Virus record (IMG/VR): IMGVR_UViG_3300044644_001125
Span: 62,001 to 126,000 of that record
Direction: 5' to 3' (one strand)
DNA: 64,000 nucleotides
Shown: piece after piece, positions 18,328 to 36,915 of the stretch
Layout: every line of letters begins with the position of its first letter
How positions within the stretch are numbered: the first letter of the stretch is position 1
The notes under the pieces: generated by a model
Seen by the model: the letters and a program-made list of their open reading frames with translations, nothing else
The model's database searches: none
What the model was told of the DNA's origin: nothing
Translations under genes and position numbers: made by a program

Positions 18328-18408
18328 GGTCTTTGCTCCGGTAGTGCTTGTTAAGTTGGGTATAGTTTAATCGTAAATTGACGAACTGTCAAGCATTATC
18401 TTTTAGAA

Positions 18409-18540: not shown

Positions 18541-18987
18541 ACTTTGAATTTTGGGTTTGTTTTGCCAATGGTTGCCGCGCTTAGTAGCTGGATTGTTTTG
18601 TTGTCGAATCCGAGCTGTTTGGCTAGGTCTTTGACTGTTTCTTTTGGTTTAGTGGGTTTGTTCATTTGGCAGTGCCTATTTGTGTTTTAAGGGGTGTACA
18701 AGGCTCGCGCGTTGCGCTCGCGAGCCTAATGTTTATAAACCTTTTAATAACTGGTTTACTACTGGTTTTAAATCGTCTTGTAGGTTATCTAGTTCTAATT
18801 GGTATTCTAAACTTTCGCTGTATTGTTCTAAATCTCTTACTACATAGTCAAGTAATCTCATTCTACCTTCTAGGGTTAGGACTTCGTACATATCAATGGT
18901 AATTGGACTGTAGTTACTCATGGGTAGTGCCTCTTTGTTTTGTTAAGGTGGTGCTATTCTAAAAGATAATTAACGCACTGTCAAGTA

Positions 18988-19599
18988 TTATCTTTTAGTT
19001 AGAATCAATCTAATGTCTTTCTTTTCTGGGGTATAAGCCCAAACTCGTTGGTCGAAGTCGTAGTCTTCTTCACCGTGGTGTAGTTTAACATTGGTTTCTA
19101 GTATGGTGTTAGTTGCAATGTCTACGATGTCTACTTGGTATTCTTCTAGGTTGCTAAACATTTTCCAAAGTTTTCTCGCGCCATAGTATTGTTCTTCGCC
19201 ACCCATTAGCGTATAACCTGCGTCAATTAGGCTCATATAGCTACCTGATGCAATGCCACGTCCATATTGGTTATCGACAACCTTGACTGCTTTAACGCTT
19301 AGTATGTTACTATAGTGTTCAAAGTTTGGCATTTTTTCAAGGCTAATTTCACCAGATACTTTAAACTTATCCTTTATAGTTTTGTAGTTCTTATCGATGT
19401 CTTCAGCAAAGAACCCGACAACAAACTCATAAGAGTTGTTTAGTTGATAGCGTTCCATTACGCTATCAGTCGTGTTTACAGTTCCAACAAAGGTATATTT
19501 GCTTTTCATTACACCCATTGTTATATCTGAATAGGCTAGTTGGGTATTCCATTCACCGTATCGTGCGATTGACATTTCTGTTAAGTCTTTTATTCTCAT
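18988..19599 (-). CDS. GNAT-like acetyltransferase
   Basis: VKVVDNQYGRGIA acetyl-CoA motif, ARKLW; N-terminus MRIKDLTE. Confidence 0.6.
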   Translation of the reverse strand: MRIKDLTEMSIARYGEWNTQLAYSDITMGVMKSKYTFVGTVNTTDSVMERYQLNNSYEFVVGFFAEDIDKNYKTIKDKFKVSGEISLEKMPNFEHYSNILSVKAVKVVDNQYGRGIASGSYMSLIDAGYTLMGGEEQYYGARKLWKMFSNLEEYQVDIVDIATNTILETNVKLHHGEEDYDFDQRVWAYTPEKKDIRLILTKR

Positions 19600-20924
19600 G
19601 GTCGTTCTCTTGGTTACAAGGCTCGCCTACGGCTCGCAAGCCTTGTATTGAGTTATCTTTTAGTTATCTATCGCCAACTGCTTCGTTATGTAGTTGTTTA
19701 ATGCGTTCGTCTGTTTCGATGGCAAAGTAACTTTGTAAAATGCTTTTTAAGTATCCAACGTCTTCTAAACAGGTATCTAGTGCATCATCGACTAATTCGT
19801 CTATTAGTTGTTCAATATTCATGGGTAGTGCCTCTTTGTTTTGTTAAGGTGCGAGTAGTATATAACTACTCGCTGGGTTTGTCAATTGTTTTTTATTGGT
19901 CTTCTAGCATTAAGTCTTCAAGGTTTGTAACTAAGCCGTCAAAGTCTTCATCTGGGCCGAGTGTACTTGCGTAGAAGAAGACTGTTTCGCGGTCGATGCC
20001 GAAGTCATCTGCTAGGTTGTTCAAGTAGTCTTTGCGGTTTTTGTAACCTTCTTCAGTGTAAATGCTCATAGGTAGTGCCTCTTTGGTTATCTTGTAGCGG
20101 TATTGCTACAAGGTGGTTATATTCTAAAAGATAATTGATTTACTGTCAACTGTTTTATTGTACTGGTTTGCCATTTTCGTCATAGATACCAGTACGGTTG
20201 TGCATTTCGTCATAGTTGTCTAGGCATTCATTGATTTTGTCGTTGTTGCCTTTGTAGAGTGTTTTACAGAAACCCACTTGATAGCCTACTGTTGGTTCTA
20301 CTGCTCTATAGATAAAGTAAGCACTTGTTAAGGTGATTACTGATAATATGATTGATGTTATGATTTCTTTCATTGTTTTTCTCTGTTCGGTTAAGGTGGT
20401 GATAGTTTAATCGTTTATCACCACCGTGTCAAATCTTTTTTATGCGAAGTCTTTAACTAATTCTACTTCGGTTGCGTATGGGAAGAACTGCTCGAATAAC
20501 TCGTTTGCTTTGGTCGATGACTCTGCGTTGATTACCAAGGTTTCTTCAGTGCCGTACATACCAATGTAGTGGTATTGATATGGGAATAGTTCTTTCATTT
20601 GTAGTGCCTCTTGGTTTTGTTAAGGTGGGTACAGTATAGTTGTTCTGTACCCAGTTGTCAACTATTATTTTGATTGGCAGGTTGCCGCGTATCCGATTAA
20701 ACCTTCTTCTAGTGCGTGGTTTAATGCTGGTGTAATTTGTGCTTTGTAGGTTTCGCATTCAGCAGTGGTTGTGAAGTTACGCGCCACATTAGTTGGTGTG
20801 TCGTTGTTCATGTCAACTGGTGTGAAGTAAAGTGATACGAGTAAGATAATCATTTTGTTTGTCCTGTAGTGCTTTGTTAAGGTGGGTACATTGTATTCTC
20901 AATGTACCCAGTTGTCAACTCTTT

Positions 20925-21119
20925 TTATCCTATTGCTTGCACTAAGTATGCGTAGGTGATTTCTTTCTTCGTGCCTTTTGGTAATCCTAGTAGCTGGCAA
21001 GCTACTGTGTTTGCTGATTTTCCACGACCTTTCAATCCTTTGATTTCTAATCCAAGTGCTGATTTCAAGGTTAATAATTGGAATCTGCTGATTTGTTCTG
21101 GTGTAGTTAATGCGCTCAT
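20925..21119 (-). CDS. Small early protein (copy 1)
   Basis: Near-identical to 38032-38226. Confidence 0.8.
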   Translation of the reverse strand: MSALTTPEQISRFQLLTLKSALGLEIKGLKGRGKSANTVACQLLGLPKGTKKEITYAYLVQAIG

Positions 21120-22088
21120 CTTTGTATCTCCGGTAGTGCTTTGTTAAGGTGGGTATAGTTTAGTCGTTTATGCCTACATTGTCAACAACTTTCGTTAAAC
21201 AATCTACAGGATAATAACAACAGTCGCCAAAAGATACTGAATACGAGTACCACGTAGTCATTACACCGTCTATGAGGTTATTCCATTCGCTTTGCTTGGT
21301 ATTGACTACGTCACCAATGATAGGCTTTGAACCTCCTAAGTCTAGGCTAAGTGTTAAGCCTATCACTGAGTTGATGTCTGTTTTCATGCGATCTAGTACG
21401 TTCATGGTTTGTCCTTTGACAGCTCGCGCTAACGCGCTCGCATAATATAATCTTTAGTCTGCTGGTTTAACATGGATTATGTTTATATCACTACCGTGTT
21501 TATAATGTGCCATCTTTCTTGCGTTTTCTGCATCTGATATAGTAATATAGTCATACTGGGTAATGGTACGTTTAGTGAAGTTGTAATCGTACTTCTCGAA
21601 GTAGACTTCAAACTGGGTTAGTCCATCGGTTCTTCTACACATGGGTTGCCTCTATGTTGGATAGATAGTTGTGCCGTAGACTTCTACGGGTTCGAGTAGA
21701 ATAGTATCATACTCGACTGTCACTGTCAATAAGGCGACCAGTACTATTATTGCGATTGATTGTAGTATAATTATAGTTCGCATTGCTTATCTCTTGAACA
21801 GGTAATAACCGACAGCTAACATGACTAGGTATCCCGCGCCACCACTGCCAATGATTCCAGCAGTGCCAAAGATAAGCAATCCAACCATAACAAACCAGAA
21901 AGCAACCTTAATGAATAAGGTTAGCACTGTTGCGAATATAGATAGCATTATCAATGCAAAAATGATAGTGGCGGCTAGTTCGGGTGCGTTTTCCATTGGT
22001 TGCTCTCGTATGTGCGTATAGGTGTGTTATGTCACAGCGGGTAAAGAGGCTAAAAGATGATTGAGTTATCTTTTAGCCTTGTTGATAT

Positions 22089-22391
22089 TTACCCTTGTAG
22101 TTCTTCTAGGGTAACTCTGGTTACTCGTTCAATGATGAGTTGGTCTGGTGTAACCGCAGTGAGTTCGAGATACCAAGCGTCAAAATCTTCATCCTGTGTA
22201 AACGTTTTAACTGTTACTTCATCGGTATCTGAATCAAACTCGAATTCATCAACTAGGTGTGGGTATCCCTCGTGTTCTACTTTGATTTGAAAACCTGTGT
22301 TAAGGTTATAATACGTTACGGTTTCTTGCCATTCTGCTTGATTGGCTGTTAATACGTTTACTGCTGTTAATGCGTCTAGGTATGCTTTCAT
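22089..22391 (-). CDS. Early acidic hypothetical protein
   Basis: Cassette promoter and SD. Confidence 0.7.
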   Translation of the reverse strand: MKAYLDALTAVNVLTANQAEWQETVTYYNLNTGFQIKVEHEGYPHLVDEFEFDSDTDEVTVKTFTQDEDFDAWYLELTAVTPDQLIIERVTRVTLEELQG

Positions 22392-22461
22392 CTTGTTTAC
22401 TCCGGTAGTGCTTTGTTAAGGTGGTGATAGTTTATTTGAAAACTATCACCGTGTCAAGTTG

Positions 22462-23388
22462 TTAGTGTAATATTTTTGAACCTTTGGTTCTGTTACATCT
22501 CCAACATAATGTTTGTAAGTTACTTTCTACAGTAAAACCGCCTTTCGATAATGGTATAATATGGTCGATTTCTAATAGTAGATTCTTTTCATCATTAGTT
22601 GATAGATTACACATTTGGCAAGTATGGCTATCTCTGTTCTTTATCTTAGTTCTAAGTGCCGATGTCATCAATGCGCGTTGTCCAGCGATACTCTTTTTGA
22701 ATTTGATGTTATCATTCAAGTAAGCAATAAATCTGTTTAAGTTTGATATATCGAATTGAATGTCATTTTTCATAAAACTGTTACCACCAGCCGACACGTA
22801 TTGAAACGAATAAACTGGAAAATACAACTCGCTCAAGTCAACATAATTCAAACCCAACTTCTGTTTCAACAATTCTGAATCAAAACGCATAATCAATGGT
22901 GGTATGCAATTTGATATACTTGCAATAATCTCATCTCTTTCAGTGGTTAGTAATCTTTTACCCTCTTGAACCGACCCGTAATCATTTAACATACTTTCAA
23001 AGTTCGATAATGCGTCTTCATCAATTCCAATATTGAAATACTTACACAGGTACTTGAATGGTTGATTGTTTGAGTTTTTCAGCACAGAAGACGAACAGCG
23101 ATGAACAAATGTATTACTTTTTCTGATATTTGCCCAGTTTGGTCTTTTGAAATTATAATTGCTACTATCACGCAACGTACTTACACCCATATTGTTAGCT
23201 GGTATATGAACGTGAGATTGTTTTAACTTCTCTATGTACTCGTTTAATTCGTTGCAATTGTTAACATGATAATATACGGTATCGCGTATATTCAAGAAAA
23301 TCTGACTTTTAAAATATCTATTTCTATATACTACATATACAATCCACATCACACATAACAATCCAATCACAGCAATTGCCAATTTCAT
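22462..23388 (-). CDS. Membrane-anchored HNH endonuclease
   Basis: N-terminal TM helix; RD..TCQMC, EIDHIIP, NLQTLCWRCN. Confidence 0.85.
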   Translation of the reverse strand: MKLAIAVIGLLCVMWIVYVVYRNRYFKSQIFLNIRDTVYYHVNNCNELNEYIEKLKQSHVHIPANNMGVSTLRDSSNYNFKRPNWANIRKSNTFVHRCSSSVLKNSNNQPFKYLCKYFNIGIDEDALSNFESMLNDYGSVQEGKRLLTTERDEIIASISNCIPPLIMRFDSELLKQKLGLNYVDLSELYFPVYSFQYVSAGGNSFMKNDIQFDISNLNRFIAYLNDNIKFKKSIAGQRALMTSALRTKIKNRDSHTCQMCNLSTNDEKNLLLEIDHIIPLSKGGFTVESNLQTLCWRCNRTKGSKILH

Positions 23389-23461
23389 CTTGTTTACTCC
23401 GTAGTGCTTTGTTAAGGTGGGTACATTATAGTTGCAATGTACCCAGTTGTCAAGTTATCTT

Positions 23462-23788
23462 TTAGATGAGTTCACCATCTTCGTCAAATTCTGAATCAAA
23501 GTCAACGACTTTGTATTCGTCATCTGCTGGTATTTCAGTAACAACATAGTTCAAACGGTCACAGTAATGCCAACCACTTAAGATTGGGTTGTTGCCATAG
23601 CACATAATTGTCCAAACACGTTTAGGGTCTGTTACTTTCATCTGGTTGATATATTCTTCTTCCTCACCGTATGTTTCGTATGAGATGCCACCAAAGCTCG
23701 CAAATTCTACATCTTCATCTTCTGGTAAGAAGTGGTTGATTTGTGGTTTGAATTGTTCTTCGAATTGTTCCCAAGATATTGTTTTCAT
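23462..23788 (-). CDS. Early hypothetical protein
   Basis: Cassette promoter and SD. Confidence 0.75.
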   Translation of the reverse strand: MKTISWEQFEEQFKPQINHFLPEDEDVEFASFGGISYETYGEEEEYINQMKVTDPKRVWTIMCYGNNPILSGWHYCDRLNYVVTEIPADDEYKVVDFDSEFDEDGELI

Positions 23789-24679
23789 GTTTTGTTACTC
23801 CGTAGTGCTTTGTTAAGGTGGGTACAGTATAGTTGTTCTGTACCCAGTTGTCAACGATTATCTTTTAGGTTATAGTTCTAGTATGAGTTCGTTATTATCG
23901 TACTTAGACTTCCAAACCAGTTTTGCGGTGTACATATTAACGTCTAGTTCTGGTTCAAGCCATGTTAGTTCACTGTTTGACATATCGAATACATCGTCAA
24001 CTTCTTCCGATGCAAGGAAAGTTCCAGTGGGAATGATCGACCAATAAGTAACTTGGTTGATGTCATTACTTGATATAATCTCACGACCTTTCTCGATTTT
24101 TTCATTAAGAAAGTCTAAGTTGCCATAGTAAAACAACGGTGTGTCTGAGTATTCTTCGGTGGTTGAAAGTTCGTATAGTTTCATTGTAGTGCCTCGTTGT
24201 TGTTTAAAGTGGGTGTATTCTAAAAGATAACTGCTTTACTGTCAAGTGTTATATACTAATGGAATTGGTCTAATACCTAGTTGTTTTCTCATTAGAATCG
24301 CAATATCTTCTGTTTTTCTTACAAGCACTTTACCCTTTTTATTAAGAAGATTCGTTGATGCAACAATTCTGTTGTTGACTACATAAAACGTGTTTATTTT
24401 ATGCTCGGTGCGTGCATGAATATTGAATGCTATTATCTCGTACCCAGCATCTATTTTGTAAGCGTACACACTAGGTGGGCATACCAGTTCTTTTGTCAAA
24501 AGTCCAGTAGCAACTCTTTTATCTAGTATTGCTATAATTCTGCTTGATTCTTTCTTTAACCATCTTTGTTTAATTTTACCTTTTTTCATCTTGTTTACTC
24601 CGTAGTGCTTTGTTAAGGTGGGTATATTCTAAAAGATAACTGCCTCAAAGTCAACAGTTATCTTTTAGGTTAATCTAGG

Positions 24680-24979
24680 TTAAATGTGATAGAATTCTTT
24701 AGCCTCTTGGATAATTGCATCGATGTCCACTTGGCTATGTTGGGTTTCTACTACTTTAGAAGTGGTACGTTTATGTTTAACATAGCGTAAGGTTTTGAAG
24801 AAGTCTTGGTACATTGCGTGTGATACAAAGTTACCTTCTACTCTGCCTACCGATGCGCAGGTGTGTAACGCTCCATCTGACGCTTTACTTGTTCTGATAC
24901 TAAGTTGAAGTTTACCGTTAAGCATGGTTACTGTTTCTGCTCTCCATGCGTTGCCATATTTATTGATTAGTGTTTGCAT
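24680..24979 (-). CDS. Early hypothetical protein
   Basis: Cassette promoter and SD. Confidence 0.7.
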   Translation of the reverse strand: MQTLINKYGNAWRAETVTMLNGKLQLSIRTSKASDGALHTCASVGRVEGNFVSHAMYQDFFKTLRYVKHKRTTSKVVETQHSQVDIDAIIQEAKEFYHI

Positions 24980-25321
24980 TGCTGTTTTCCTGTAGTGCTT
25001 TGTTAAGGTGCGAGTAGTATATAACTACTCGCTTTATATGTCAACAGTTTATCTCAAATGTTCTTCTAGTAATTTCAACTGTTTTTTAGATAGGTTAAGT
25101 TCAGCTAATACGTTTCTAAAAGATGATGTAAGATAACCTGTAACAAAGGCATAGTTCACCTCTCCTTTGTTAAAATCTGCCGATGCTTGTTCTGCTGTTG
25201 TTTTCATATGGTCGATTACTGTTTCTAATAGGATTGGGTTTGTCATCGTCTTTACTCCGGTAGTGCTTGTTAAGGTGGGTACAGTATAGTTGTTCTGTAC
25301 CCATTTGTCAACAGTTATCTT

Positions 25322-25906
25322 TTAGTCTTCGAGTTCTTCTTCGCGTTCCCATTCTGCCATGTTTTCATATATAGCAAATGCCTCGTTAATGGCTTGTGGT
25401 ATATGCTTTTTAACCCATGCACTATCACCATCAATGCTATATTCATCAACGTCTGTGTATTCTTCATTGCCTTCGTAATAACCACAGAATGCGCAACCAC
25501 CCTCATAGAAGTAAGCCTCGATTTCAAATCCCAATGCGGCTAATGCGTTATAACCTTCTACTGGTGGACTCCATGCACTATCGAAATCTAATGTTAATGT
25601 ATCGCCTTCTAGTGTGCTTTCTGTATCAGTTCCGCCAATATCCCACTTCGTACCCCATTTGGCATTGGCAAACTCGTACCAATCAACGTATCCGTATTTT
25701 TCTTTATTTGCTTTTTGCTTTGCCTCTAATTCGAGTTGTTGCTCTGTACCCTCACCATAGAATCCACTGGTTGTGTTTCTTAGTTCTTCTGGGATTGGTA
25801 TAAACTCGTTAAGTAGTTTGCCATTGTCAAACGCCTCTTGAGCGCGGACAAGCATTGCAGGGTCTTTGTGTTTTAAAGTTGCTTTGTTATTGCACCAGTT
25901 TGGCAT
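25322..25906 (-). CDS. DUF1281/YubB (Api92-like ferredoxin-fold) protein
   Basis: MPNWCNN, DWY...WGTKWD, FDSAWSPP, YEGG. Confidence 0.8.
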   Translation of the reverse strand: MPNWCNNKATLKHKDPAMLVRAQEAFDNGKLLNEFIPIPEELRNTTSGFYGEGTEQQLELEAKQKANKEKYGYVDWYEFANAKWGTKWDIGGTDTESTLEGDTLTLDFDSAWSPPVEGYNALAALGFEIEAYFYEGGCAFCGYYEGNEEYTDVDEYSIDGDSAWVKKHIPQAINEAFAIYENMAEWEREEELED

Positions 25907-25991
25907 GGTCGTATCCTCGTTGTAGTGTTTAATGTAGTGCCTTGTTTCAAGGTGGTGATAGTATATTCTTTTATCACCACCTTGTCAATCT

Positions 25992-26402
25992 TTATTTTGC
26001 TAATAATCCAATAACTACTGGTGTTAATTCTTTTACATCATAGCCGTTGCAATACCACCATTGTTTGCCTTGTAGCAGGTAGAAGTATTCGCCACCCTTA
26101 CGGAATCTAAGCCATTCTTCTACATTGGCATGGTTACGACTTTCAATACCAGTTTCGCCTCTATCACGTCCATAGAACGTGGTGCTTTTGACTTTAGTAG
26201 CACGGTCAAAGTTGTGTTTATGACCTACAAAATCTTTCAGTGAACTAACGTCACCGTTGGCTAGTAGTTGGACTGTTTTTCTTTTGTTGTAGTGTTCTGC
26301 TAAGGTTTGTCCTACGCCTTCTAGGTAGCCGTCCCAGTGGCAGTAAATTGATTGAATTGTTCCGTTTGGTAATACCATTGCGATTGTGCTTCTTGTTGCC
26401 AT
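25992..26402 (-). CDS. Conserved phage early protein (IYCHWDGY type)
   Basis: MATRSTI...IYCHWDGY..GVG..L; diverged paralog at 31659-32162. Confidence 0.75.
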   Translation of the reverse strand: MATRSTIAMVLPNGTIQSIYCHWDGYLEGVGQTLAEHYNKRKTVQLLANGDVSSLKDFVGHKHNFDRATKVKSTTFYGRDRGETGIESRNHANVEEWLRFRKGGEYFYLLQGKQWWYCNGYDVKELTPVVIGLLAK

Positions 26403-26473
26403 TGTCTTTACTCCGTAGTGCTTTGTTAAGGTGGGTATATTCTAAAAGATAATACCCACCGTGTCAATACTTT

Positions 26474-27409
26474 TTATTCAATAATGCTATCAACCCATCG
26501 CGCAAAAGCATTTATTGGGTGTTCAAAGTCGGGTGGGATATACCAGAATGATCCTTGTGGTTCCCATCGTGCTCCTAATACCTTCACCATATCTTTTTCA
26601 CTATATGGAACTTTAAGTTTTATCGTCATGCCATTAGTGTATATTAGTTGGTGCTTTGCTAATATACTATCATCACAATTTCCGGTAATATCTGAATTAT
26701 TAACGGTCTCAAAGAATTTACTATGTTTAAACTGCAATTTAATCATGGTTAATCGTAGATCATTCAGTTCTAATTGTTGTTTATCTATATCTGCCTGTAG
26801 CTTTTCCAATCGTGTTTTACGCCGGTGCATCTCTAGTTGACGCATGTTAATGGATTTAAAATACAATTGAATCAAAAATTCTTTCATATCAACCGATGAT
26901 TTAAAACCAACTCTATAATGTTGACCAGCATATTCTAACTCATTGAATTCGCCTACGTCTTTACATTCTACTACTCGATAGCTAACAATTTCAGAATACG
27001 CCCATCTTGGCAATGATGATTTGTCGGTGGTGTTAGCAATCCACAATATGTTTCGATAAGCAGTTGTCCGTGATTCCACGTCCTCATCAGATATAGACGA
27101 CTGTTGCAATTCAACCACCAAGTAACCATCAGGAAGTCTTGGGTCTCTGATACAAATATCAGCAATGTTATTTGGCCACAATGGGTCTCTAACTTCCACT
27201 TCTGATACATCTAGCATATTTTGCCATTTATAGTGCCATTCGCCTTTTCCCTTGGCATATGCACACGAATTCGCAGAATGCGCCCAATGCCATGTCTTAA
27301 TCATTCCGGTTTTAGCGATTACTACTTCATTACAGCATTGGCAAAGTGCTTTTCTAATTTCCTTATCTGGTCTTACACGGTACCCTTCTTCAGTCACTGC
27401 TATATACAT
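26474..27409 (-). CDS. CoiA-like nuclease with C-terminal DUF5710-like domain
   Basis: CQCC..HWAH, ADI..VELQQS (PD-D/ExK-like), LKVPYSEKDMVKVLGARW. Confidence 0.75.
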   Translation of the reverse strand: MYIAVTEEGYRVRPDKEIRKALCQCCNEVVIAKTGMIKTWHWAHSANSCAYAKGKGEWHYKWQNMLDVSEVEVRDPLWPNNIADICIRDPRLPDGYLVVELQQSSISDEDVESRTTAYRNILWIANTTDKSSLPRWAYSEIVSYRVVECKDVGEFNELEYAGQHYRVGFKSSVDMKEFLIQLYFKSINMRQLEMHRRKTRLEKLQADIDKQQLELNDLRLTMIKLQFKHSKFFETVNNSDITGNCDDSILAKHQLIYTNGMTIKLKVPYSEKDMVKVLGARWEPQGSFWYIPPDFEHPINAFARWVDSIIE

Positions 27410-27485
27410 GATTATTCCTCGTAACTAAAATCAATTATTATACGACATTATCTTTTAGTTTTTACCCATTGTCAATACCCTAGAC

Positions 27486-27514
27486 AAAAAAATGCCCAGC
27501 TACAAGAACTGGGC
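27486..27514 (-). terminator. Intrinsic terminator
   Basis: GCCCAG stem with U7 tail on minus strand. Confidence 0.75.
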
Positions 27515-27680
27515 GAGGTGAGTGTACATCAGGTGCTAATATCAGGCACTACTCCGATACTAGCCTCCTTTGGGTGGTAGATCCGCAAGGCACTACTCCT
27601 GCAAATCTATCTGGGTTGCCAATACAAGGCACTACTCCTGCATTGACGGGTACTACCTTAACACAACGAATTGTCTGTTT
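27486..27680 (-). ncRNA. Candidate three-hairpin sRNA with identical GGAGUAGUGCCU loops
   Basis: Hairpins 27618-27647, 27578-27609, 27535-27564 with different stems, fully paired only on the minus strand (G-U), and an identical 12-nt loop. Confidence 0.7.
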
Positions 27681-27693
27681 CATGTCTATTCTC

Positions 27694-27834
27694 CTAAGAG
27701 TAAAACTGTTTGATTACTTTCTTTGACTGGGTTCTATTCAACGCAATGCCAGTGGATAGAAAGTATCTTATATAATCTTCAACGAATTGTTCACGTTTTG
27801 CTTGTCTAATTTGTAATTTGCTTTTTGCTTTCAT
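27694..27834 (-). CDS. Small basic protein
   Basis: True start MKAKSK downstream of tRNA, AAGGT SD. Confidence 0.55.
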   Translation of the reverse strand: MKAKSKLQIRQAKREQFVEDYIRYFLSTGIALNRTQSKKVIKQFYS

Positions 27835-27855
27835 TGTCTTTACCTTTATGTTTGT

Positions 27856-27931
27856 TGGTGCCATTACAGGGATTCGAACCCCGATCTTACGCATTATGAG
27901 TACGCGGCATTAACCGTTATGCTATAATGGC
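27856..27931 (-). tRNA. tRNA with CAU anticodon (elongator Met or Ile2)
   Basis: GCCATTA/TAATGGC acceptor, GCAT/ATGC D stem, CT-CAT-AA loop, GTTCGAATC T loop, encoded CCA; lacks initiator features. Confidence 0.92.
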
Positions 27932-28325
27932 ATTTGTATATTCTAAAAGATAATTGAATCATTGTCAAGCATTATCTTTTAGGGTTGCCGTCCTTGGCAG
28001 TGAGTGTTTTATTGGTTTGTTAATTGTTCATCTAATGCACGTTTTGCAATTACTGCCCATAAGTAAGGGTGGCTAAATTCAGTATCATTCAATGCTTGTT
28101 CAACACGTTCATTGTCATCAGCATTCAAAGGTATTTCCAATTCAGTTACAGTTTCATCAATGAATGCTAGATACTCTGTGCCTCTAACATGACTGATAAG
28201 GTCAAATATTCTTTCTACTGCATTTTCTGTTAATGTTATTGTATAGGTTTTCATATGTAGTGCCTCTTTGTTTTATTAATGTGGTGATAGTCTAAAAGAT
28301 AATCACCACATTGTCAAGTTATATA

Positions 28326-28709
28326 TTAAGCCGCTAATGCGTATGCTTTGTTCCACTGTCCGATATTGATGTCAACATAAAAGCCTCTATCGTGATAATC
28401 TGACATAATGTCCGAATTATCATAGTTGCCTTCATTCATGATTTCAAGTGCTTTAGTCAAGAACTCGTGTGCAACACCTTTGTTAAACTGGTCGTCTAAC
28501 CAATAAGGATTGACTTGTATATAATCTTTGCTGTAGTTACTGTCTACTTCTTTTAACGCGCCATAGAAGTCGATTTTACCACCTTGTATATTAAGAACGA
28601 TGGTGTAGCAATGTTTACGCGCCACAGTTGCTTTGATACCGTATTCTTTTGCTAATGCTCTTAATCTTACTGCTTTCAACTCTTTTTGTTCTTTACTAAT
28701 GTATGGCAT
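28326..28709 (-). CDS. Early protein resembling polyvalent-protein LPD-type domain
   Basis: NYDNSDIMSDYHDRGFY..INIG.W motif. Confidence 0.55.
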   Translation of the reverse strand: MPYISKEQKELKAVRLRALAKEYGIKATVARKHCYTIVLNIQGGKIDFYGALKEVDSNYSKDYIQVNPYWLDDQFNKGVAHEFLTKALEIMNEGNYDNSDIMSDYHDRGFYVDINIGQWNKAYALAA

Positions 28710-30209
28710 GATTTTTACTCCGTAGTGCTTTGTTAAGGTGGGTACATTCTAGTTTAAAATGCACCCAAAGTCAAGCATTATCTTTTAGATATATTCACGT
28801 CCTGTTTCTTCAATCAACGCAGGTGTGAACCAATCACGGTATCTGGTGGCATTCTCACGACCAGCACCCCAGCCAAAATCTTCTACCCAGTATAACTGTT
28901 CACCATCAAACTCATCTATCTTACCTAAGATAACAAACTGTTTACCAAATACGTCATCATCACTAAAGCCTTGATTGGCTACTGCATCATCTTGAATGAA
29001 GTCTAAGAAGTGTGCCAAACCCATTGCGTGGTCTGAACCATTGTTCAGTAACCATTCTTTTTGTTCTCTAAGTAACGCCCAGTCTATGTTTTTAAGTGTA
29101 ATCATTTTCTATTCTCCGTAGTGCTTTGTTAAAGTGGCTCTAGTATCTCATATAAGAACCACCTTGTCAACTTTAATATTCTTCGTGTGTGATAATTCTT
29201 TCTACATCGTCTGGGACTGTTTCAATCGTATAATCTAAGATTTCTTCATCACCAGTCAATCTTTCGTTGATTTCTTCGGGTAACCAGTAGTCTAGTTTGT
29301 GGTCATCGTTTACTGTCAATAAGAATGTTACTTTTACTGTTTTCATTTGTAGTGCCTCTTTAGATTGTTTGATATATTTCTCGCTGTACTGTTTCTTCGT
29401 ATGCGTCTGCGCAGTCCTCTTGATTTGCATCGCATTCGCTACACGCTAATTGTGATTTCGGTCTGACGTAATTGTCATTGCATTCACATTCCCAATAAGA
29501 ATGGTTTAGCGTAATCAAACCGTAGTTTTCAATCACATCACCTTGTGCGTTTGTGTCTAACATGGTTATTGCTCCGTAGTGCTTTGTTGAGGTGGGTACA
29601 TTCTAAAAGATGATGTACCCAAAGTCAAGCATTATCTTTTAGTCAAACGCTTTGACTATTGAATCAATAAGATTGTCCATATATTCCACCACTTCACTGA
29701 TAGTATCATCTTCAAATTTTTCCCATATCGTAGCATAATCAATACAGTCAAAACTATCTGCTAATTCATTTGATAACATTTCATACGTTTTAACGGCATC
29801 ATTATCATATTCAGATAAGAATGTGTTAATTGCGATTTCAATTGCTTTTTCTTTTGTAGTCATGTCTATTACTCCGTAGTGCTTTGTTAAGGTGCGAGTA
29901 GTTTAATCTATCTCACACCAGTTGTCAACTATTATCTTTTAGTTTGCGGTTAACAAATCTAAAAATTCTTGGTATGGAATCATTACTTCAAATCCCATGT
30001 TGTTATCATAAACTACCCATGTTGAATTTTTAGATGACAGGCTTATGAACTTAATGAGTGCCGTGTTTAGTATTACTAATGTTTCATGCGTTGCAGTTGA
30101 ACCGCGTAGTTTTTCTGTTTTAGTTGCTTTAATGAACATGGTCTTTACTCCGTAGTGCTTTGTTAAGGTGCGAGTAGTATATTACTACTCGCTTTAGTTG
30201 TCAACTGTT

Positions 30210-30710
30210 TTATATAATCATTGTTTTTGGTATTCTGTAAACAATACCACTTGCAACACCTAATAGCGGTTTAACGCTTACCACTTTCACTACTGCGACA
30301 TATGAATTCCTCAACTGGATAATGTCACCAATCATCAAGTTAGCGGCACGTTTGCGTGTTTTACTAGCATTTTCGTGAAACTTAACTACATTATCGCGCC
30401 ATTCTTGGCAAGTAACTGTTGCCTCTTTTAAAAACTTTAGTGGGCAGTTATATTGATAAGGGTGCATACTTTCACACATATCTTTGTAACCATAGCCTTT
30501 ATCGTTTTTAAAGTATTCAAGTCTGAATAGCAGAATAACCTTTTGACCTAACACATTGTTAGGATTATAATCAACGTCTTTTTGTGATACTGTGTACAAA
30601 CCCCATAGGTTATTGCCAACCAACGACCATTGAGTTATTGCATCATTGTCTAATTTAATTTGTCTAACTAATGCTTGTTTGCCAGTGTTGCTATAAGATA
30701 ACCAACCCAT
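30210..30710 (-). CDS. Conserved phage early protein (GYKDMCESMHP type)
   Basis: MGW..., GYKDM.E.M.P..Y.CP..., EWR motifs. Confidence 0.7.
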   Translation of the reverse strand: MGWLSYSNTGKQALVRQIKLDNDAITQWSLVGNNLWGLYTVSQKDVDYNPNNVLGQKVILLFRLEYFKNDKGYGYKDMCESMHPYQYNCPLKFLKEATVTCQEWRDNVVKFHENASKTRKRAANLMIGDIIQLRNSYVAVVKVVSVKPLLGVASGIVYRIPKTMII

Positions 30711-30789
30711 TGTCTTTACTCCGTAGTGCTTTGTTAAGGTGGGTACAGTATAGTTGTTCTGTACCCAGTTGTCAACTCTTTTTTTTCAA

Positions 30790-30901
30790 CTATCAGTAAG
30801 TAAGTCTACCATTATTAAGATTTAACGTATTAACGAAAAATGTACTGGCTCAAGCCTTGTATTGGGTGCTTGAGGACACCCGCAGACCCACTTACTGATA
30901 G
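30790..30901 (-). ncRNA. Candidate structured ncRNA in a cassette slot
   Basis: 20-bp closing stem (30790-30809 with 30882-30901, G-U on minus strand) and inner CTCAAGC/GCTTGAG hairpin; promoter at about 30935-30972 with no SD or ORF. Confidence 0.55.
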
Positions 30902-31658
30902 CTCTTAGGCTCGTGCCTATCGGCACTCGCTAAGTTGGGTACATTATCTTTTAGAATGTACCCATTGTCAAGTATTATTTTAAACTACCTTACCTACGAA
31001 AACGTAATTATGTCTACTCATATCAGCTAGATTACCAATCGAGTTAATCCAAAAAGGATCTGTATTTTGTGAATCAAGTATAACCTTATTGGCAACTTCT
31101 TCTAGGTGGTGTACCTTGTTTACTTGAGTTTTACCTAGTAAGATACTATTGTCTAAATTATCTTTTAGTGCTTTAGCCACTTGCGCTAAGTCACTTTCGT
31201 GTCTGGTAAAACTACCAGCAATGGATATTGGGTTTATGTTCATATTAGCACCTATCACTTTGATGTGGCAAACAATGCCGTAAATGCCCACAGCATACTC
31301 TTAATGCCGCGCCATTGAGCGGCGCGTATTGCTGTAATAGATACTGTGGTGACCTGTGTTCTTCGTATGGTGGTGGCATCATTACTGTTGGTGACATTTG
31401 GCAACCATACAAAGAAACTAAAAGTATATAGGCTATTTTACGCATGACTGAGTACCTAACAAAACAAAACCGAAACAGATTAACCCAAAGCCAACTGCTA
31501 TTGCAATAATTGCCGTTAACCACTGGCTAGTCATTAAACCTAAGTCACCAATCGAACCTAGTGCCATACCTGTTGCGATTGAAGTCATCGCTTTACTTAA
31601 ATTTGTCATAGAGTGCCTCGTGTGCGTAGGTGTACCCGCCTTCACAGCGGGTAATCTG

Positions 31659-32162
31659 TTAGTGTCTTGTTGCTGGCTTGATACCAAAGATGGTATACAT
31701 CCGTTCATCAAACTTATCTAAGATAACGTCTGGTAGGATTTCCATAAGTTCATCTATGATTTCTGCCTTGAGTTGTTCAACATCAATCATTTCAACTTCG
31801 GTTTGTTTAGTTGTAAACTCGTTCTCTTGGCTTAATTGCAAGAGTACCGTTTCAAGGTTATGCAATGTTTTATCCTGTCGAGTGGCAACTTCCCAAAAAC
31901 CAATTCGATTATAGATAAAGATATAATCAGCATTAGTTTCATCTAAAAGATGATTGAGTGTCTTGTGTATCTCACTTTCATCTAGGTCACCAGTATCATC
32001 CGTTATTTCTGCTCTATCTCCTATCAACATCAATTTAGAGATGTTACTTTGGTCGATGTTAGCTAAAAGATAACGTCCAACATCTTTTAGAGTTCCTTCG
32101 TGGATATAGACGGATTCAACGACACCACCTTCTCTTACCCATGCAACTGTACTACTAGGCAT
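31659..32162 (-). CDS. Diverged paralog of 25992-26402
   Basis: SVYIHEGTLKDVGRYL, LMLIGD, DYIFIY pattern. Confidence 0.6.
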   Translation of the reverse strand: MPSSTVAWVREGGVVESVYIHEGTLKDVGRYLLANIDQSNISKLMLIGDRAEITDDTGDLDESEIHKTLNHLLDETNADYIFIYNRIGFWEVATRQDKTLHNLETVLLQLSQENEFTTKQTEVEMIDVEQLKAEIIDELMEILPDVILDKFDERMYTIFGIKPATRH

Positions 32163-33738
32163 TTTCTACCTCTCTTGCGATTATATCTGCTATTGTTTCG
32201 TCAGTGGCTTTATAGATAAGCCAGTTACCAATCTGTACCTTATGCTTTGCGTTCATGTACTTTAAACCAAAGTTACCCTCAAAGATTCGTTGTTTAGCGG
32301 CTGGGATGATGATAACATCCTCGCCAATGTACAAGTGGGTTCTGTCGGTATTATCAGTCAACAACGCCTTAAAGGTTGTTTCACTGGTATGGTTATCAAC
32401 GTACTGTTGGAACAAATCCGCCATTGGACTTGTTACTACTTCTTCAAACTTCATGTTATCGTTCCTTGTTAGCTCACCGCTAACGCGGTTCGCACGTTAA
32501 CGGTGAAGTTGTTAGTTAAGCTGGGTTAAGTATCTGTAATCCGTAGATTAAATCTTCGTCTGTAATCTCATCGTATGAGAGTATGTATTGTTCGCCATCA
32601 TCAACTGTATGTACATGAATCATCTTATCCTCTGGTGATAAGCCATCAATCACATAATCAACGTCATCTTTTACAATTAAGAATGCTTGTTCGATTAAGG
32701 TATTAAGTTGTTCTCTTGTTCTCATTGGTAGTGCCTCTTTGTTAGTGTAGTGGTATGGTATCAATTATCTTTTAGGTTGTCAACTTATTTCTTACTGTCC
32801 ATTAAGTCTTGCATACCGTCTAAGTGGTAGATTCGATTCTTATGGAATACAAACCCACCTATGTTTGTAAAGTAAATTTTGCAGTAGTTAGTTGCAATGT
32901 CTTTTTGGAAGTGGGTGAATACTGCAATACCCGCAATCAACGCGCCAATCGCAATACCACTAACAAATGCTCTTAATCCCCTAAAGTTATCTGATACTTC
33001 TACTAATCTTGGTTTCTGTTCGTAAGTTGCCATCTGTAGTGCCTCTTTGTTAAGTTGTGGCTATTCTAAAAGATAATCGAACTGCTGTCAACAACTTTCT
33101 GTAACAAGGTTCTCATGTCTTGGCATTCGCTGTCATCTTCTTCTGAAAACTCATAACCAAACGCAATAATATATTCTAAGGCAGTTTTAATCAAGTCTAC
33201 TTCATTTGCGTCAAAGTTCATGTTACTGTACTCTATAGTTATGTTTAAGGTCAATGTCTGGTGTCAATGGCATTGGTTTAGCTTTCGTATCAGTTCTTGG
33301 TAAGTGGATTTGTTTATGGTTAACGATAACATACTCTACCGTAAACTTATCTGGGCAAATCTGATACAAGGTTTCACCACTGCAATGTACATGGTCATAG
33401 AATCCTGTTTCATCTGGGAAGTCTGGTACATCAATAACCGCGTGTGCATTGGTGGTAAAAATGGCTAGTGCTAGTAGTAATTTCTTCATTGTCTTTTCTC
33501 GATTGTTGCTATTGTTCCAACTAAGTTTTGTGCAAATGTTGCTTTGAATTCTTGGTTATTCAGTGAAGTTGTTTTAACCCATTCATCGATAAAGTAACTT
33601 ACTGGTGTTAACTTTCTTACTTGGGACTTAGCCACTCCTGTATGGGTTGCTAAGGTTTGTTCTATTGTGGTCATGTCGCTATCCTCTGTTAAGTTGCAGG
33701 TATCTTACCCTAAAATACCTGCATTTGTCAACAACTCG

Positions 33739-34197
33739 TTAGTAAAATTCCGGCATGAATTCTTCTTCAAAGTCATCGATAAAATCGAGTTCATTAAAGT
33801 CATTATCTGCAAACTGTTCCATGTCTACATCACTTGGTGTATAATTGCCTTTCTTTGCCGCTACATAGCTTGTAACTCTATCAACCAGTCTTTCCATTGG
33901 CTTGTCTAAGTTCTTCCCAGTGACGGTGCCTGTGTTGCATTCTAACTTGATGTCAAATAACACATCCGCCAAGCCTACTGAATATTTAATGTCGCAATCG
34001 AATAAGAAGTTTACCGCGCCACTGGTGTTAGATTTTAAACCGTTTTGATAGTAATCATAGTATACGCGTCCAATGGCTCTCATCATCTCACCTTCAACAC
34101 TTCCAGCATTACCTGCTTTTGGTACGATTTCTTTTAATGCGTTATATTCGTTTTGCATTTTGCCTAGATTGTTCCAGTATATGTTTTTCATTTTCAT
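33739..34197 (-). CDS. Conserved phage early protein
   Basis: YWN..GK.Q, GEMMRA...YYDYYQNG. Confidence 0.7.
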   Translation of the reverse strand: MKMKNIYWNNLGKMQNEYNALKEIVPKAGNAGSVEGEMMRAIGRVYYDYYQNGLKSNTSGAVNFLFDCDIKYSVGLADVLFDIKLECNTGTVTGKNLDKPMERLVDRVTSYVAAKKGNYTPSDVDMEQFADNDFNELDFIDDFEEEFMPEFY

Positions 34198-35573
34198 TTA
34201 CTCCGTAGTGCTTGTTAAGGTGGTGATAGTTTAATTGGAAACTATCACCGTGTCAAGTTATCTTTTAGTCTTCAGATTCTCTGCGGTCTAATTCAATGGC
34301 TAGTAACTCTTGCATAACTTCAGTAAAGGCATCTCTTGATTCTAATTCTGAATACAACTCAAACTTGAGTTCCAGTTCATCGTATGTCATTTCACTGATT
34401 TGGTTTTTGATTTCATTTATGTTCATTGGTAGTGCCTCTGGGTTGGTTAGGTTAGGCTCGCGCGTTGCGCTCGCGAGCCATGTATGTTGTTTAGATGATA
34501 CAATCGTTATCTGCATCAATTTCCAATGTTACGCATTCGGTGGAAATATCGTCACCATTATCAATCCATGCCAATCCAACACGATTTTTATCTATTGTGA
34601 ATTGTTCATCTGCGTATGCAACCGATACCACTACCGGTAAGTCTGCATCGAATGTGGATAATACTGCAATTAGTTCTTTGATTGTCATTATCTTTACTCC
34701 GTAGTGCTTGTTAAGGTGGTGATAGTTTAATTGGAAACTATCACCTTGTCAAGTTATCTTTTAGGTTAGGCTCGCGCGTTGCGCTCGCAAGCCTTGTATG
34801 TTTAGGTTGACACCTACTTGATTAGAGTAGTTAGAAGGTGCAGTTTCCTTCCATGCCAAGTATCACTTGCACTGCACCCTTATGTCATTATCTTTTAGGT
34901 TATTGGTCTTCGTATGCTCTGGCTAGTAACTCTGCCGTTTTAAAGATATGGTGAACTCTATCATCTTTTAGTGCGATTTCAAGAGCCTCCTCGTCATCAA
35001 TCGAGAAGTCATTGTCAAAGTGTTCTACCATGTACTCCTCGAAACTATCTGCCTCAGATTCTAGCAAGTAGTCTAAGATACTAGACAAACGGTTTAAGTT
35101 GGTTTCTGTTAAGGTGATTGTTCTGTATTGTTCGCTCATTGTCTATTACTCCGTAGTGCTTTGTTAAGGTGCGAGTAGTATATTACTACTCGCTAAGTTT
35201 GTCAACTTCTATTCATGGTACATTTTACCGTTAAATTCTACTGCTTGTGGTTCATCGTCAGAATCTGCCCAATCAGTCCAGTAAATCGCGTCATCCGCGT
35301 AAGCATCTTCGTAAGTGGCATATCCAGCCGCAATACTCCATTCAACTGCATCTTTGATATTCTTAAAGTATTGGTCTGCCTCGCTGGTAACCCATCCTGC
35401 GTTCATACCTTCACCAGTGATTGAACAAACTCGCATCCAAGTTTTAAATTCTGTAGTCATTGTCTTTACTCCGTAGTGCTTTGTTAAGGTGCGAGTAGTA
35501 TATTACTACTCGCTTTAAATGTCAACTATTTTTTTCTTCGTACTGGCTCGTGCCTATCGGCACTCGCAGAAAT

Positions 35574-35867
35574 TTAATCGATGGTTCTAACTGCTCTGAC
35601 GTATCCGTCACCGTAACTCTTACCGTAGTAACTCTGAATCCCGATTGACATATGATTACTCCATGCGTTGACATCATTATACTCAGTAGATGACCAGTAG
35701 TAATCTTCCTCAAACTCATTTTCCGATTCATAAATCTGCGTTAGTTCGTCTGTGGTTGGTAAACGCCATCCTGTTTTCTCGTTGATATTAAGCGAAAAGC
35801 AGTATTGGCTGGCATCATACCAGTTGGCTTGAATCTCTGTTTCTTTTGGTGCGATTTCAATGTTCAT
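35574..35867 (-). CDS. Mini DUF1566/C-lectin-fold protein
   Basis: W.DA..YC...GWRLPT..EL...YWSSTE...VRAVR. Confidence 0.8.
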   Translation of the reverse strand: MNIEIAPKETEIQANWYDASQYCFSLNINEKTGWRLPTTDELTQIYESENEFEEDYYWSSTEYNDVNAWSNHMSIGIQSYYGKSYGDGYVRAVRTID

Positions 35868-35941
35868 ATCTTTTACTCCGTAGTGCTTGTTAAGGTGGGT
35901 ACATTCTAGTTGAAATATACCCAGTTGTCAACTATTTGTTT

Positions 35942-36202
35942 TTAGATTATTCTGGTTTGTTTTATTACTGCACATTCGATTCTATCTGCTGAAATTTCTT
36001 CACCAAACTCGCCATCCGTGCCTTTGAATAGTACAGTGCTACCAGCTACTTCAACTAAAGCAACCTCGACCACTTCGCCACAATCTTTAACATATATTTG
36101 ATAGTCTTTGGCAACCTCGTAATCGATTGAATCCGCATAATCCGAGTATTCTACCAAGTATGGCATGATTTCAGCTAAGGTGGTTTCTGTCATTGTGTAC
36201 AT
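35942..36202 (-). CDS. Early protein (paralog A)
   Basis: MYTMTETT...IECAV shared with 36916-37179. Confidence 0.75.
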   Translation of the reverse strand: MYTMTETTLAEIMPYLVEYSDYADSIDYEVAKDYQIYVKDCGEVVEVALVEVAGSTVLFKGTDGEFGEEISADRIECAVIKQTRII

Positions 36203-36915
36203 GGATATTCTCCGTAGTGCTTTGTTAAGGTGGGTATATTCTAGTTGAAATATACCCAGTTGTCAAGTTATCTTTTAGGTTAAATCGTGTTCTAATTTAG
36301 GGTATGTTGCGCGTAAGGTTTCAATCTTTGCTATTAAGGCAGTTATATCTGCTACTATCTCGTCCCTAGCAGTGACTTCACTCTCTGTCAGTGACTTTAA
36401 GTAATCAGTGTCATAGATGTCAAACATAGCTTTAATGTCACGTCTGTATGACTGTACCATGCTATAAAGGTCTGACCGTTTTTGAATGCCGTTCCAGTAT
36501 AAACTACTCATTGGCTTTACTCCGTAGTGCTTTGATAAGGTGGTGATAGTTTAATTGAAAACTATCACATTGTCAATCTTTTTTACCCGTGAGTTAGTTC
36601 TGCCTCAGCATCTTCTAGTGCATCAGCGACTTCTTCTTTAAAGTTGATATTATGACAATCACAGTAACGAATAATATCTACTAACAAATCTGCTACGGTT
36701 GTTTCATAACCATAATCTTCTAATTTTAATATTGCCGCAATCTTTTCAACACCAGTGTAAAAAGAAAACTTTTTAAATACTTCTTCTCCTTCTGGCATTT
36801 CCTGTAGTTCTGCTAACACAAGTTTAATCGAATTGTTCATGTTGTTTACTCCGTAGTGCTTTGTTAAGGTGGGTATATTCTAGTTGAAATATACCCAGTT
36901 GTCAACTATTTGTTT

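What the first reader, a model, noticed from the sequence alone, without database searches (positions are those of the whole stretch)
27486..27683. Three-armed small RNA whose loops are antisense to the leader shared by about 45 early genes: candidate master off-switch
Seen: on the minus strand, just downstream of the tRNA operon and before a U-tailed terminator, three hairpins have different stems (GTCAATGCA/TGTATTGGC, TAGATTTGCA/TGCGGATCTA, GCTAGTATC/GATATTAGC). They pair fully only on this strand, via G-U pairs, and all carry the identical loop GGAGUAGUGCCU. GUAGUGC(CU) is the reverse complement of GCACUAC/AGGCACUAC, which abuts or overlaps the SD in nearly every early-cassette mRNA. The same RNA also carries UGUUAAGGU (27655-27663), complementary to the other conserved leader block ACCUUAACA. 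These leader-like words occur here in the opposite orientation to all the promoters. Inference: one multivalent sRNA could base-pair to the ribosome-binding region of dozens of early mRNAs and shut down the array co-ordinately. That would explain why the leader is conserved beyond promoter needs. Alternative: the GGA in the loops makes it a CsrA/RsmA sponge.
Basis: partly seen in the sequence, partly recalled or inferred. Interest (0 to 1): 0.9.

Follow-up and report, generated by a model that had tools for sequence, protein, structure and literature searches.

The report
Phage RNA mirroring its early-gene leaders
An uncultured jumbo phage carries a conserved, folded RNA with three hairpin loops that are the exact complement of a 7-base word beside the ribosome-binding site of 44 of its early genes. 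This makes it a strong but untested candidate for one RNA that tunes or shuts off the whole early gene set, although the same stretch is also kept as a tiny protein-coding frame.

Summary
On the minus strand, 27535-27647 forms three hairpins followed by an intrinsic terminator. Ten distinct relatives from metagenomes show 97% of cells paired and 18 base pairs with compensatory changes. Stem identity falls to 57% between module types. All 30 loops remain AGUAGUGC.

GUAGUGC is the exact complement of GCACUAC, the most conserved word of the promoter-leader cassette. That word lies beside or inside the ribosome-binding site of 44 of about 66 early genes. A second conserved block, UGUUAAG(G), complements the 5' end of the leaders.

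- The true loop is 8 nt, not 12.
- GGA is lost in one module type, so the CsrA-sponge reading fails.
- There is one tRNA, not an operon, and its link to the element is not conserved.
- The element is the 3' end of an early operon, not a free-standing gene.
- It is also a 42-46-codon ORF that selection keeps open, always stopping at the UAG of loop 3.
- A second locus (18.4 kb) carries two more such loops.

Best reading: a multivalent, translated anti-leader RNA that pairs with early mRNAs. Pairing and repression are inferred, not shown.

The parts
27940..27968 (-). Early-type sigma-70 promoter of the transcription unit (TTGACA-17-TAGAAT)
   Evidence: it has the same spacer words as the other early cassettes
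27856..27931 (-). tRNA-Met (CAU), first product of the unit in this phage; absent from or displaced at the locus in some relatives
27694..27834 (-). orf46, a small basic helix-loop-helix protein that always lies immediately upstream of the element
   Evidence: it shows synonymous as well as replacement changes between relatives
27549..27683 (-). Small ORF (44 codons plus stop) overlapping hairpins 1-3; SD AGGAG at 27691-27695; the stop is the UAG of loop 3 (27549-27551)
27655..27663 (-). UGUUAAGGU block, complementary to the 5'-terminal ACCUUAACA of early mRNAs; UGUUAAG is kept in all relatives
27618..27647 (-). Hairpin 1: 11-bp stem, loop AGUAGUGC (27629-27636)
   Evidence: 9 of 11 pairs show changes on both sides
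27576..27611 (-). Hairpin 2: 12-14-bp stem, loop AGUAGUGC (27590-27597)
27535..27564 (-). Hairpin 3: 11-bp stem, loop AGUAGUGC (27546-27553) containing the ORF stop codon
27486..27514 (-). Intrinsic terminator (8-bp GC-rich stem plus U run)
18416..18445 (-). Second locus: terminator hairpin whose loop is also AGUAGUGC (18427-18434), followed by a U run
   Evidence: conserved in a relative
18455..18492 (-). Second locus: hairpin with loop AGUAGUGA (18469-18476)
18534..18540 (-). Second locus: GUAGUGC word containing the UAG stop (18537-18539) of the upstream 42-codon ORF (18540-18665)
14728..38256 (-). Proposed targets: 44 early promoter-leader cassettes. In 32 leaders GCACUAC ends 11-13 nt before the AUG; in 10 it ends 1-2 nt before the AUG.

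Best explanation
The element is the structured 3' part of an early phage transcript (orf46 and a small ORF, then a terminator). It displays three copies of an invariant 8-nt loop, A+GUAGUGC, on stems whose sequence is free to change. A single-stranded UGUUAAG(G) block lies upstream of the hairpins.

These segments base-pair with the two conserved words of the 5' UTR shared by about 44 early mRNAs: ACCUUAACA at the 5' end and GCACUAC next to or inside the ribosome-binding site. Pairing within the 30S footprint would lower translation, and probably stability, of the whole early set at once. This would give delayed negative feedback or shut-off as the stable RNA accumulates. Two further loops at 18.4 kb add to the pool.

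Shown here: the fold, loop invariance, complementarity, predicted accessibility, operon context and ORF conservation.

Inferred: pairing in vivo, the direction of the effect (repression), the timing, and any gating by translation of the embedded ORF.
For: Structure: 44 pairs, 97.3% of cells paired, 18 pairs changed on both sides against 0-3 in the slid controls.

Loop conservation: all 30 loops are identical while stems fall to 57-65% identity between module types.

The target word: GCACUAC is the most conserved part of the cassette, above the -35 and -10 elements. It is present in 44 of about 66 early genes.

Energetics: opening costs are about 0.5-0.8 kcal/mol on both partners, and the duplex is -10.2 to -10.9 kcal/mol.

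Second block: ddG is -14.4 kcal/mol against -7.4 +/- 2.5 for shuffled leaders, with 1 of 200 shuffles as low.

Background: 2 of 312 other hairpins have a loop with at least 7 nt complementary to the leader.

Conservation relative to neighbours: the element's hairpins and terminator are far more conserved than the neighbouring orf46 across relatives.

Co-occurrence: every relative with the loops also has GCACUAC leaders.

Geometry: one unpaired 5' nucleotide plus 7 pairing nucleotides matches the known rule that 1-2 nt can span the deep groove of a 6-7-bp helix (H-type pseudoknots; from established knowledge, not tested here).
Against: - There are no expression data and no cultured relative.
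- Loop and leader words never vary, so no co-variation supports pairing.
- The loop core shared by all five hairpins is AGUAGUG. The 5' A is not needed for pairing, and one loop ends in A instead of C.
- The order of the two blocks in the RNA is the reverse of what a continuous duplex with one leader needs.
- A 7-bp contact is short.
- The RNA is made from an early-type promoter at the same time as its targets, and roughly one gene faces 44 strong promoters.
- The conserved ORF through the hairpins is not explained by a plain sRNA model.
Confidence: 0.5

Rival explanations
1. The hairpins are an array of binding sites for an RNA-binding protein. Candidates are a phage protein such as the always-adjacent orf46, or a host factor. 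The protein would read the AGUAGUG loop on any stem. The complementarity to the leader would then be secondary or coincidental.
For: The pattern of an invariant loop on variable stems is the classic signature of protein-hairpin recognition. The shared core AGUAGUG includes the 5' A, which has no pairing partner in most leaders. orf46 is always the upstream neighbour.
Against: Two independent blocks of the element complement the two conserved leader blocks. The chance estimates are about 0.006 and about 0.02, the latter being my own calculation. orf46 has no recognisable RNA-binding fold or family.
Confidence: 0.17
2. Leader-loop pairing is real but the logic differs from an off-switch. One version: early mRNAs, or the leader of the same transcript in cis, pair with the element to control translation of the embedded ORF or the fate of the transcript. 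Another version: leader RNA tethered to the polymerase is captured so that termination occurs at the adjacent terminator (an anti-antitermination signal).
For: Both loci sit immediately before intrinsic terminators, and one loop is the terminator's own loop. In several relatives the same operon starts with a GCACUAC leader. The 5' leader block resembles rrn BoxA, UGCUCUUUAACA; I derived that sequence from the A. aeolicus 12-mer and the stated differences in PMC3177189. The ORF is kept open through the hairpins.
Against: The resemblance to BoxA is imperfect: 2 of the 8 recognised positions differ. In the window the unit's own promoter gives a transcript without a leader. This reading has no precedent.
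Confidence: 0.15
3. The functional product is the 42-46-residue peptide. The hairpins would be cis elements of its mRNA that affect stability or translation rate.
For: The SD and ATG are kept in all ten sequences. All indels are multiples of 3. Frame 0 has no premature stop, against 2-8 stops in the other frames. Structure-preserving randomisation keeps the frame open in only 12-22% of trials per module type.
Against: Peptide identity falls to roughly 40% between module types (peptides listed; my estimate). It follows the compensatory stem changes. Between the window and its closest relative, all 5 substitutions change the amino acid. The same 8 nt is invariant in two different reading frames, so the constraint is on nucleotides. 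No family or homologue exists outside this lineage.
Confidence: 0.1
4. The element is a CsrA/RsmA sponge that uses GGA in its loops.
For: The window version has about six GGA triplets in about 170 nt, three of them at loop entrances.
Against: In type II modules (L185, L186) the three loops are closed by GA/UC or GU/AC, and none carries GGA. The AGUAGUGC loop is nevertheless intact. The terminator loop at 18.4 kb also lacks GGA. There is no Rfam match to the CsrB/Rsm families.
Confidence: 0.02
5. The element works at the DNA level, for example as an inverted remnant of promoter-leader cassettes, a recombination hotspot or single-strand DNA hairpins, with no RNA function.
For: The early region is built from recombining cassettes of the PeSL type (PMC2839356, PMC4122927). 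The hairpin module has been swapped between near-identical flanks.
Against: G-U pairs make the fold strand-specific. Compensatory changes preserve pairing while loops stay invariant. A decaying remnant would not behave this way.
Confidence: 0.04

Closest known systems
Dual-function, multi-hairpin regulatory RNAs such as Staphylococcus aureus RNAIII (encodes delta-haemolysin), SgrS/SgrT and SR1/SR1P
   Same: A structured RNA presents the same short seed in several hairpin loops. The seed pairs with the ribosome-binding regions of many mRNAs, and the RNA also carries a small translated ORF.
   Different: There is no sequence or Rfam relationship. Here the ORF runs through the seed-bearing hairpins and stops inside one loop. 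The proposed targets are the phage's own early genes, which share one leader. The RNA is the 3' end of an operon.
sRNAs with redundant loop seeds (LhrC, RsaE/RoxS C-rich motifs)
   Same: Repeated identical seed motifs sit in loops or linkers and give multivalent binding near Shine-Dalgarno sequences.
   Different: Their seeds are C-rich anti-SD words. Here the seed pairs beside the SD (class A leaders) or between the SD and the AUG (class B), and not with the SD itself.
Phage antisense immunity RNAs: P1/P7 c4 and P4 CI (Rfam C4 family)
   Same: A phage-encoded structured RNA, processed from a longer transcript, uses exposed segments to pair with repeated complementary sites in phage leader RNA and shut down a block of genes.
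   Different: There is no Rfam C4 match. Those RNAs act on one operon of a temperate phage, not on about 44 separately promoted genes, and they contain no embedded ORF.
T4 RegA and RegB, protein-based global shut-off of early mRNAs
   Same: The proposed biological role is the same: coordinated post-transcriptional silencing of many early mRNAs through a short shared word at the ribosome-binding site. The class A leader GGAGUAAAGAC also resembles the RegB/S1 site GGAGAAUAAAA (PMC1702504).
   Different: Those effectors are proteins; here the proposed effector is an RNA. Only about 17 of the window's proteins were scanned against Pfam or PHROGs, and none matched RegA or RegB. The window was not systematically searched for a homologue.
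PeSL promoter/stem-loop cassettes of T4-type phages
   Same: The target side matches: repeated strong sigma-70 early promoters with an adjacent stem-loop flank small ORFan genes in a plastic region.
   Different: PeSLs are described as promoter/terminator and recombination modules. A shared transcribed leader word with a matching anti-leader RNA has not been described for them.
CsrB/RsmZ protein sponges
   Same: Several hairpins lie in tandem before a terminator, and the window version has GGA at the loop entrances.
   Different: GGA is not conserved among relatives. The conserved word is AGUAGUGC.

Membership tests
Trans-acting base-pairing sRNA (general class) | Conserved secondary structure with an exposed seed | tested here: met
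   97.3% of cells paired, 18 compensatory pairs and 30 of 30 identical loops. Loop opening energy is 0.5-0.7 kcal/mol.
Trans-acting base-pairing sRNA (general class) | Seed complementary to accessible sites in target translation-initiation regions | tested here: met
   A 7-nt exact complement is present in 44 leaders, 1-13 nt upstream of the AUG, with a median opening energy of 0.8 kcal/mol.
Trans-acting base-pairing sRNA (general class) | Discrete, accumulating transcript and a regulatory effect on targets | not testable with these tools
   The lineage is known only from metagenomes and has no cultured relative.
Trans-acting base-pairing sRNA (general class) | Seed and target co-vary among relatives | tested here: inconclusive
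   Both words are invariant in all relatives found.
Dual-function sRNA | Embedded small ORF maintained by selection | tested here: met
   the frame is open in 10 of 10 sequences, indels are in frame, and structure-preserving randomisation keeps the frame open in 12-22% of trials per module type.
C4 antisense RNA (P1/P7 c4, P4 CI; Rfam RF01695) | Match to the family covariance model | tested here: not met
   The only Rfam match at gathering score is the tRNA. No C4 hit appears up to E=10.
CsrB/RsmZ-type CsrA sponge | Multiple conserved GGA motifs presented in loops | tested here: not met
   Type II modules have no GGA in any of the three loops. There is no Rfam hit.
CRISPR-repeat mimic / RNA anti-CRISPR, or ToxI-like repeat antitoxin | Direct repeats with a conserved stem or whole-unit sequence | tested here: not met
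   The stems differ between the three copies and between relatives. Only the loop is repeated.
Small protein-coding gene (peptide as sole product) | Purifying selection on the amino-acid sequence | tested here: not met
   All 5 substitutions against the closest relative change the amino acid. The peptide follows the compensatory stem changes.
PeSL cassette (target side) | Sigma-70 consensus promoter plus adjacent stem-loop, repeated before ORFan genes | tested here: met
   The terminator and recombination functions were not testable.

The most novel reading that the evidence does not exclude
The element is a translation-gated anti-leader RNA. While ribosomes read the embedded ORF, which stops inside loop 3, the hairpins are melted or masked. 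When the flood of early mRNAs out-competes the element's weaker start site for ribosomes, the hairpins fold. Their three loops then clamp the shared leader of about 44 early mRNAs. This would give the phage a self-timed, load-sensing switch from early to later expression that works entirely through RNA.
Probability: 0.12. Interest if true: 0.92.

Novelty: new variant of a known kind. Interest (0 to 1): 0.75.

Why it matters
Known global shut-off of phage early genes relies on proteins such as T4 RegA, RegB and Alc. Known phage antisense RNAs act on single operons. A single RNA that addresses a leader shared by dozens of separately promoted early genes would be a new regulatory design for large lytic phages.

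It would also explain why the transcribed part of these recombining cassettes is more conserved than the promoter hexamers. The system is compact: a 7-nt word and an 8-nt loop. It can therefore be tested directly with reporters and compensatory mutations. It would also offer a portable, orthogonal multi-gene translational control module.

Tried and rejected
- Near and distant DNA searches of cultured phage genomes found nothing, for either the element or the cassette.
- Loose three-loop and two-loop pattern scans of viral, metagenome and genome collections gave only coding direct repeats. No cellular look-alike of the hairpin array was found.
- A degenerate leader pattern with a free heptamer gave only chance hits, so no relative with a different word was found.
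- Searching with the downstream 311-aa gene returned only the source contig.
- Rfam gave nothing at gathering score or at E up to 10.
- Pfam and PHROGs gave no informative matches for orf46, the small ORF or their neighbours.
- The orf46 model (pLDDT 87) has no PDB fold match.
- The Atu_ph07 region holding a homologue of a neighbouring gene lacks such cassettes.
- Cofold cannot model loop kissing, so the loop interaction was scored only as duplex energy plus opening energy.
- Rejected readings: CsrA sponge, CRISPR-like or ToxI-like repeats, gene-60-type ribosome hopping (no matching landing codon), and an extended anti-SD mimic (GGAG is not conserved).

Full report
**What is in the sequence**

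Read on the minus strand, 27968-27486 is one predicted transcription unit:
- an early-type promoter, TTGACA-17-TAGAAT
- a single tRNA-Met at 27931-27856
- a 46-codon ORF, orf46, at 27834-27694
- a Shine-Dalgarno sequence and an ATG at 27683
- three hairpins
- an intrinsic terminator at 27514-27494 followed by a U run

Each stem contains 2-3 G-U pairs. The minus strand folds at -66.5 kcal/mol (z = -3.1). The plus strand does not form the hairpins (z = -0.9). The real loop is the 8-mer AGUAGUGC.

**The leader**

GCACTAC occurs 44 times on the minus strand, all between 14.7 and 38.2 kb. Each copy lies in a cassette with this order: TTGACA, 17 nt, a -10 element, ACCTTAACA, then GCACTAC.
- In 32 cassettes (class A), GGAG follows the word, and the AUG lies 11-13 nt after it.
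- In 10 cassettes (class B), a GAGG Shine-Dalgarno sequence precedes the word, and the AUG lies 1-2 nt after it.

A simple gene census finds the word upstream of 44 of about 66 minus-strand genes in the cluster. It is the most conserved part of the cassette, above the promoter hexamers. The element's own genes lack it.

**A second locus**

At 18416-18540 on the minus strand, a 42-codon ORF ends at the UAG of a GUGUAGUGC word. It is followed by a hairpin with loop AGUAGUGA. After that comes a terminator hairpin whose loop is again AGUAGUGC. This locus is conserved in a relative.

**Relatives**

The window comes from a 327-kb IMG/VR contig. Its DnaB helicase, which carries an intein, is about 50% identical to those of jumbo phages such as PA5oct and Atu_ph07. 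No cultured phage shares the element or the cassette.

I found relatives through the small ORFs that gene callers had predicted. This gave ten distinct versions of the element (alignment A6). On the four-helix structure:
- 97.3% of cells pair.
- 18 of 44 pairs change on both sides, against 0-3 when the partners are slid by 1-3 columns.
- None of 500 shuffles reaches the observed values.

There are three stem-module types. Stem identity between types falls to 57-65%, yet all 30 loops are AGUAGUGC. Type II lies between flanks 92-97% identical to the window, which indicates a module swap by recombination. The hairpins and terminator are much better conserved than the neighbouring orf46. Every relative with the loops also has GCACUAC leaders. 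The tRNA is absent or displaced in some relatives, whereas orf46 is always adjacent.

**Is the complementarity meaningful?**

GUAGUGC is the exact complement of the invariant leader heptamer. Among 312 other minus-strand hairpins, only 2 have a loop with at least 7 nt complementary to the leader consensus. My analytic estimate for a random 8-nt loop is about 0.004.

The RNA also carries the only exact minus-strand copy of UGUUAAGGU. UGUUAAG is kept in all relatives. Cofolding places the leader's 5' end on this block with ddG -14.4 kcal/mol, against -7.4 +/- 2.5 for shuffled leaders.

Both partners are predicted to be open, with opening costs of 0.5-0.8 kcal/mol. The 7-bp duplex is about -10.5 kcal/mol. 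The duplex would cover -19 to -13 in class A leaders and lie between the SD and the AUG in class B, so both fall inside the 30S footprint.

**What the plain sRNA model misses**

The element is also an ORF that selection keeps open.
- In all ten sequences frame 0 has no premature stop, while the other frames have 2-8.
- All indels are multiples of three.
- The loop 1 to loop 2 spacing is always 39 nt.
- The loop 2 to loop 3 spacing is 44, 41 or 38 nt, so the UAG of loop 3 is always the stop codon.

Randomisation that preserves structure and loops keeps the frame open in only 12-22% of trials per module type. The peptide itself is poorly conserved and follows the compensatory stem changes. All 5 substitutions against the closest relative change the amino acid. 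The dominant constraint is therefore on the RNA, but ribosomes very probably traverse it. I cannot explain why. A translation-gated regulator is the most interesting possibility.

**Alternatives**

- The CsrA-sponge reading fails because type II loops and the 18.4-kb terminator loop lack GGA.
- A protein-binding hairpin array remains possible. The pattern of an invariant loop on variable stems fits it, and the shared core is AGUAGUG. It does not explain the two independent complementarities to the leader.
- A cis role at terminators is conceivable. Both loci abut terminators, and the leader's 5' block resembles rrn BoxA.
- A purely DNA-level remnant is contradicted by the strand-specific pairing and the covariation.

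**Comparison with known systems**

The element works most like multi-loop, dual-function sRNAs such as RNAIII, and like the phage antisense RNAs c4 and CI. It belongs to no Rfam family. Its proposed role parallels the protein-based early shut-off by T4 RegA and RegB. The class A SD region also resembles the RegB/S1 site (PMC1702504). The target cassettes resemble PeSLs (PMC2839356, PMC4122927). A literature search found no description of a phage RNA directed at a leader shared by its early genes.

**Verdict**

It is a new variant of a known kind (a base-pairing regulatory RNA). Its function is unproven.

Noticed in passing
window 14700-38300, minus strand (e.g. 38017-37990, 34745-34718, 35513-35491, 16007-15973): Nearly every early promoter carries a perfect 9-13-bp palindrome with no G-U pairs between the -35 element and the start site, with the -10 region in or next to its loop. 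At least four sequence families occur (TGGGTACA, GGTGATAG, GCGAGTAGT, GAGGTTATA). The stem sequence differs between families while the inverted symmetry is kept. This resembles PeSL promoter/stem-loop cassettes.
   Followed up: partly
window 18701-18727, 34455-34479, 34768-34794, 19615-19647 (minus): A GC-rich hairpin (GGCTCGCG, loop AGCGCAACG, CGCGAGCC) is repeated in intergenic positions inside early operons. A variant is present in relative L006.
   Followed up: no
window early cassettes, e.g. 24629-24668: The word CTAAAAGATAA lies upstream of the -35 element, and its inverse TTATCTTTTAG lies in the promoter spacer. Together they can form stems of up to 16 bp.
   Followed up: no
window class A leaders (e.g. 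28709-28728): The SD region GGAGUAAAGAC resembles the 11-nt T4 RegB/S1 cleavage consensus GGAGAAUAAAA (PMC1702504). The window was not systematically searched for a RegB homologue.
   Followed up: partly
window class A leaders, 5' block: CACCUUAACA resembles the E. coli rrn BoxA core CUCUUUAACA (8 of 10 positions). I derived the BoxA sequence from PMC3177189. A Nus-factor loading role for the leader is conceivable.
   Followed up: partly
window 5984-7822 (+): The DnaB-like helicase is interrupted by a HINT/intein domain (Pfam PT-HINT and Intein_splicing hits at residues 251-322).
   Followed up: no
L185 264-478 and L186 721-935, compared with window 27486-27706: The hairpin module (type II) has 57% stem identity to the window but sits between flanks 92-97% identical to it. 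This points to replacement of the whole module by recombination.
   Followed up: yes
L189 and L190, hairpin 2: A variant 3' arm (CCCACGG instead of CUUGCGG) breaks two pairs of hairpin 2 but keeps the ORF (Cys to His). It is the only case where the coding frame is kept at the expense of pairing.
   Followed up: partly
window 18654-18665 compared with L177: The leader of the 42-codon ORF at locus 2 reads GCACUGC in the window and GCACUAC in the relative. The change still allows a G-U pair with the loop.
   Followed up: partly
L183 1150-1210: One orf46 homologue (P0007) is followed by a different hairpin and a partial duplicate of the orf46 3' end. The contig ends before an element could be seen.
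   Followed up: no
window 22462-23388 (-) and 26474-27409 (-): An HNH endonuclease and a protein with CoiA_N and DUF5710 domains lie among the small early ORFan genes. The gene downstream of the element differs between relatives (DUF3223 or others).
   Followed up: no
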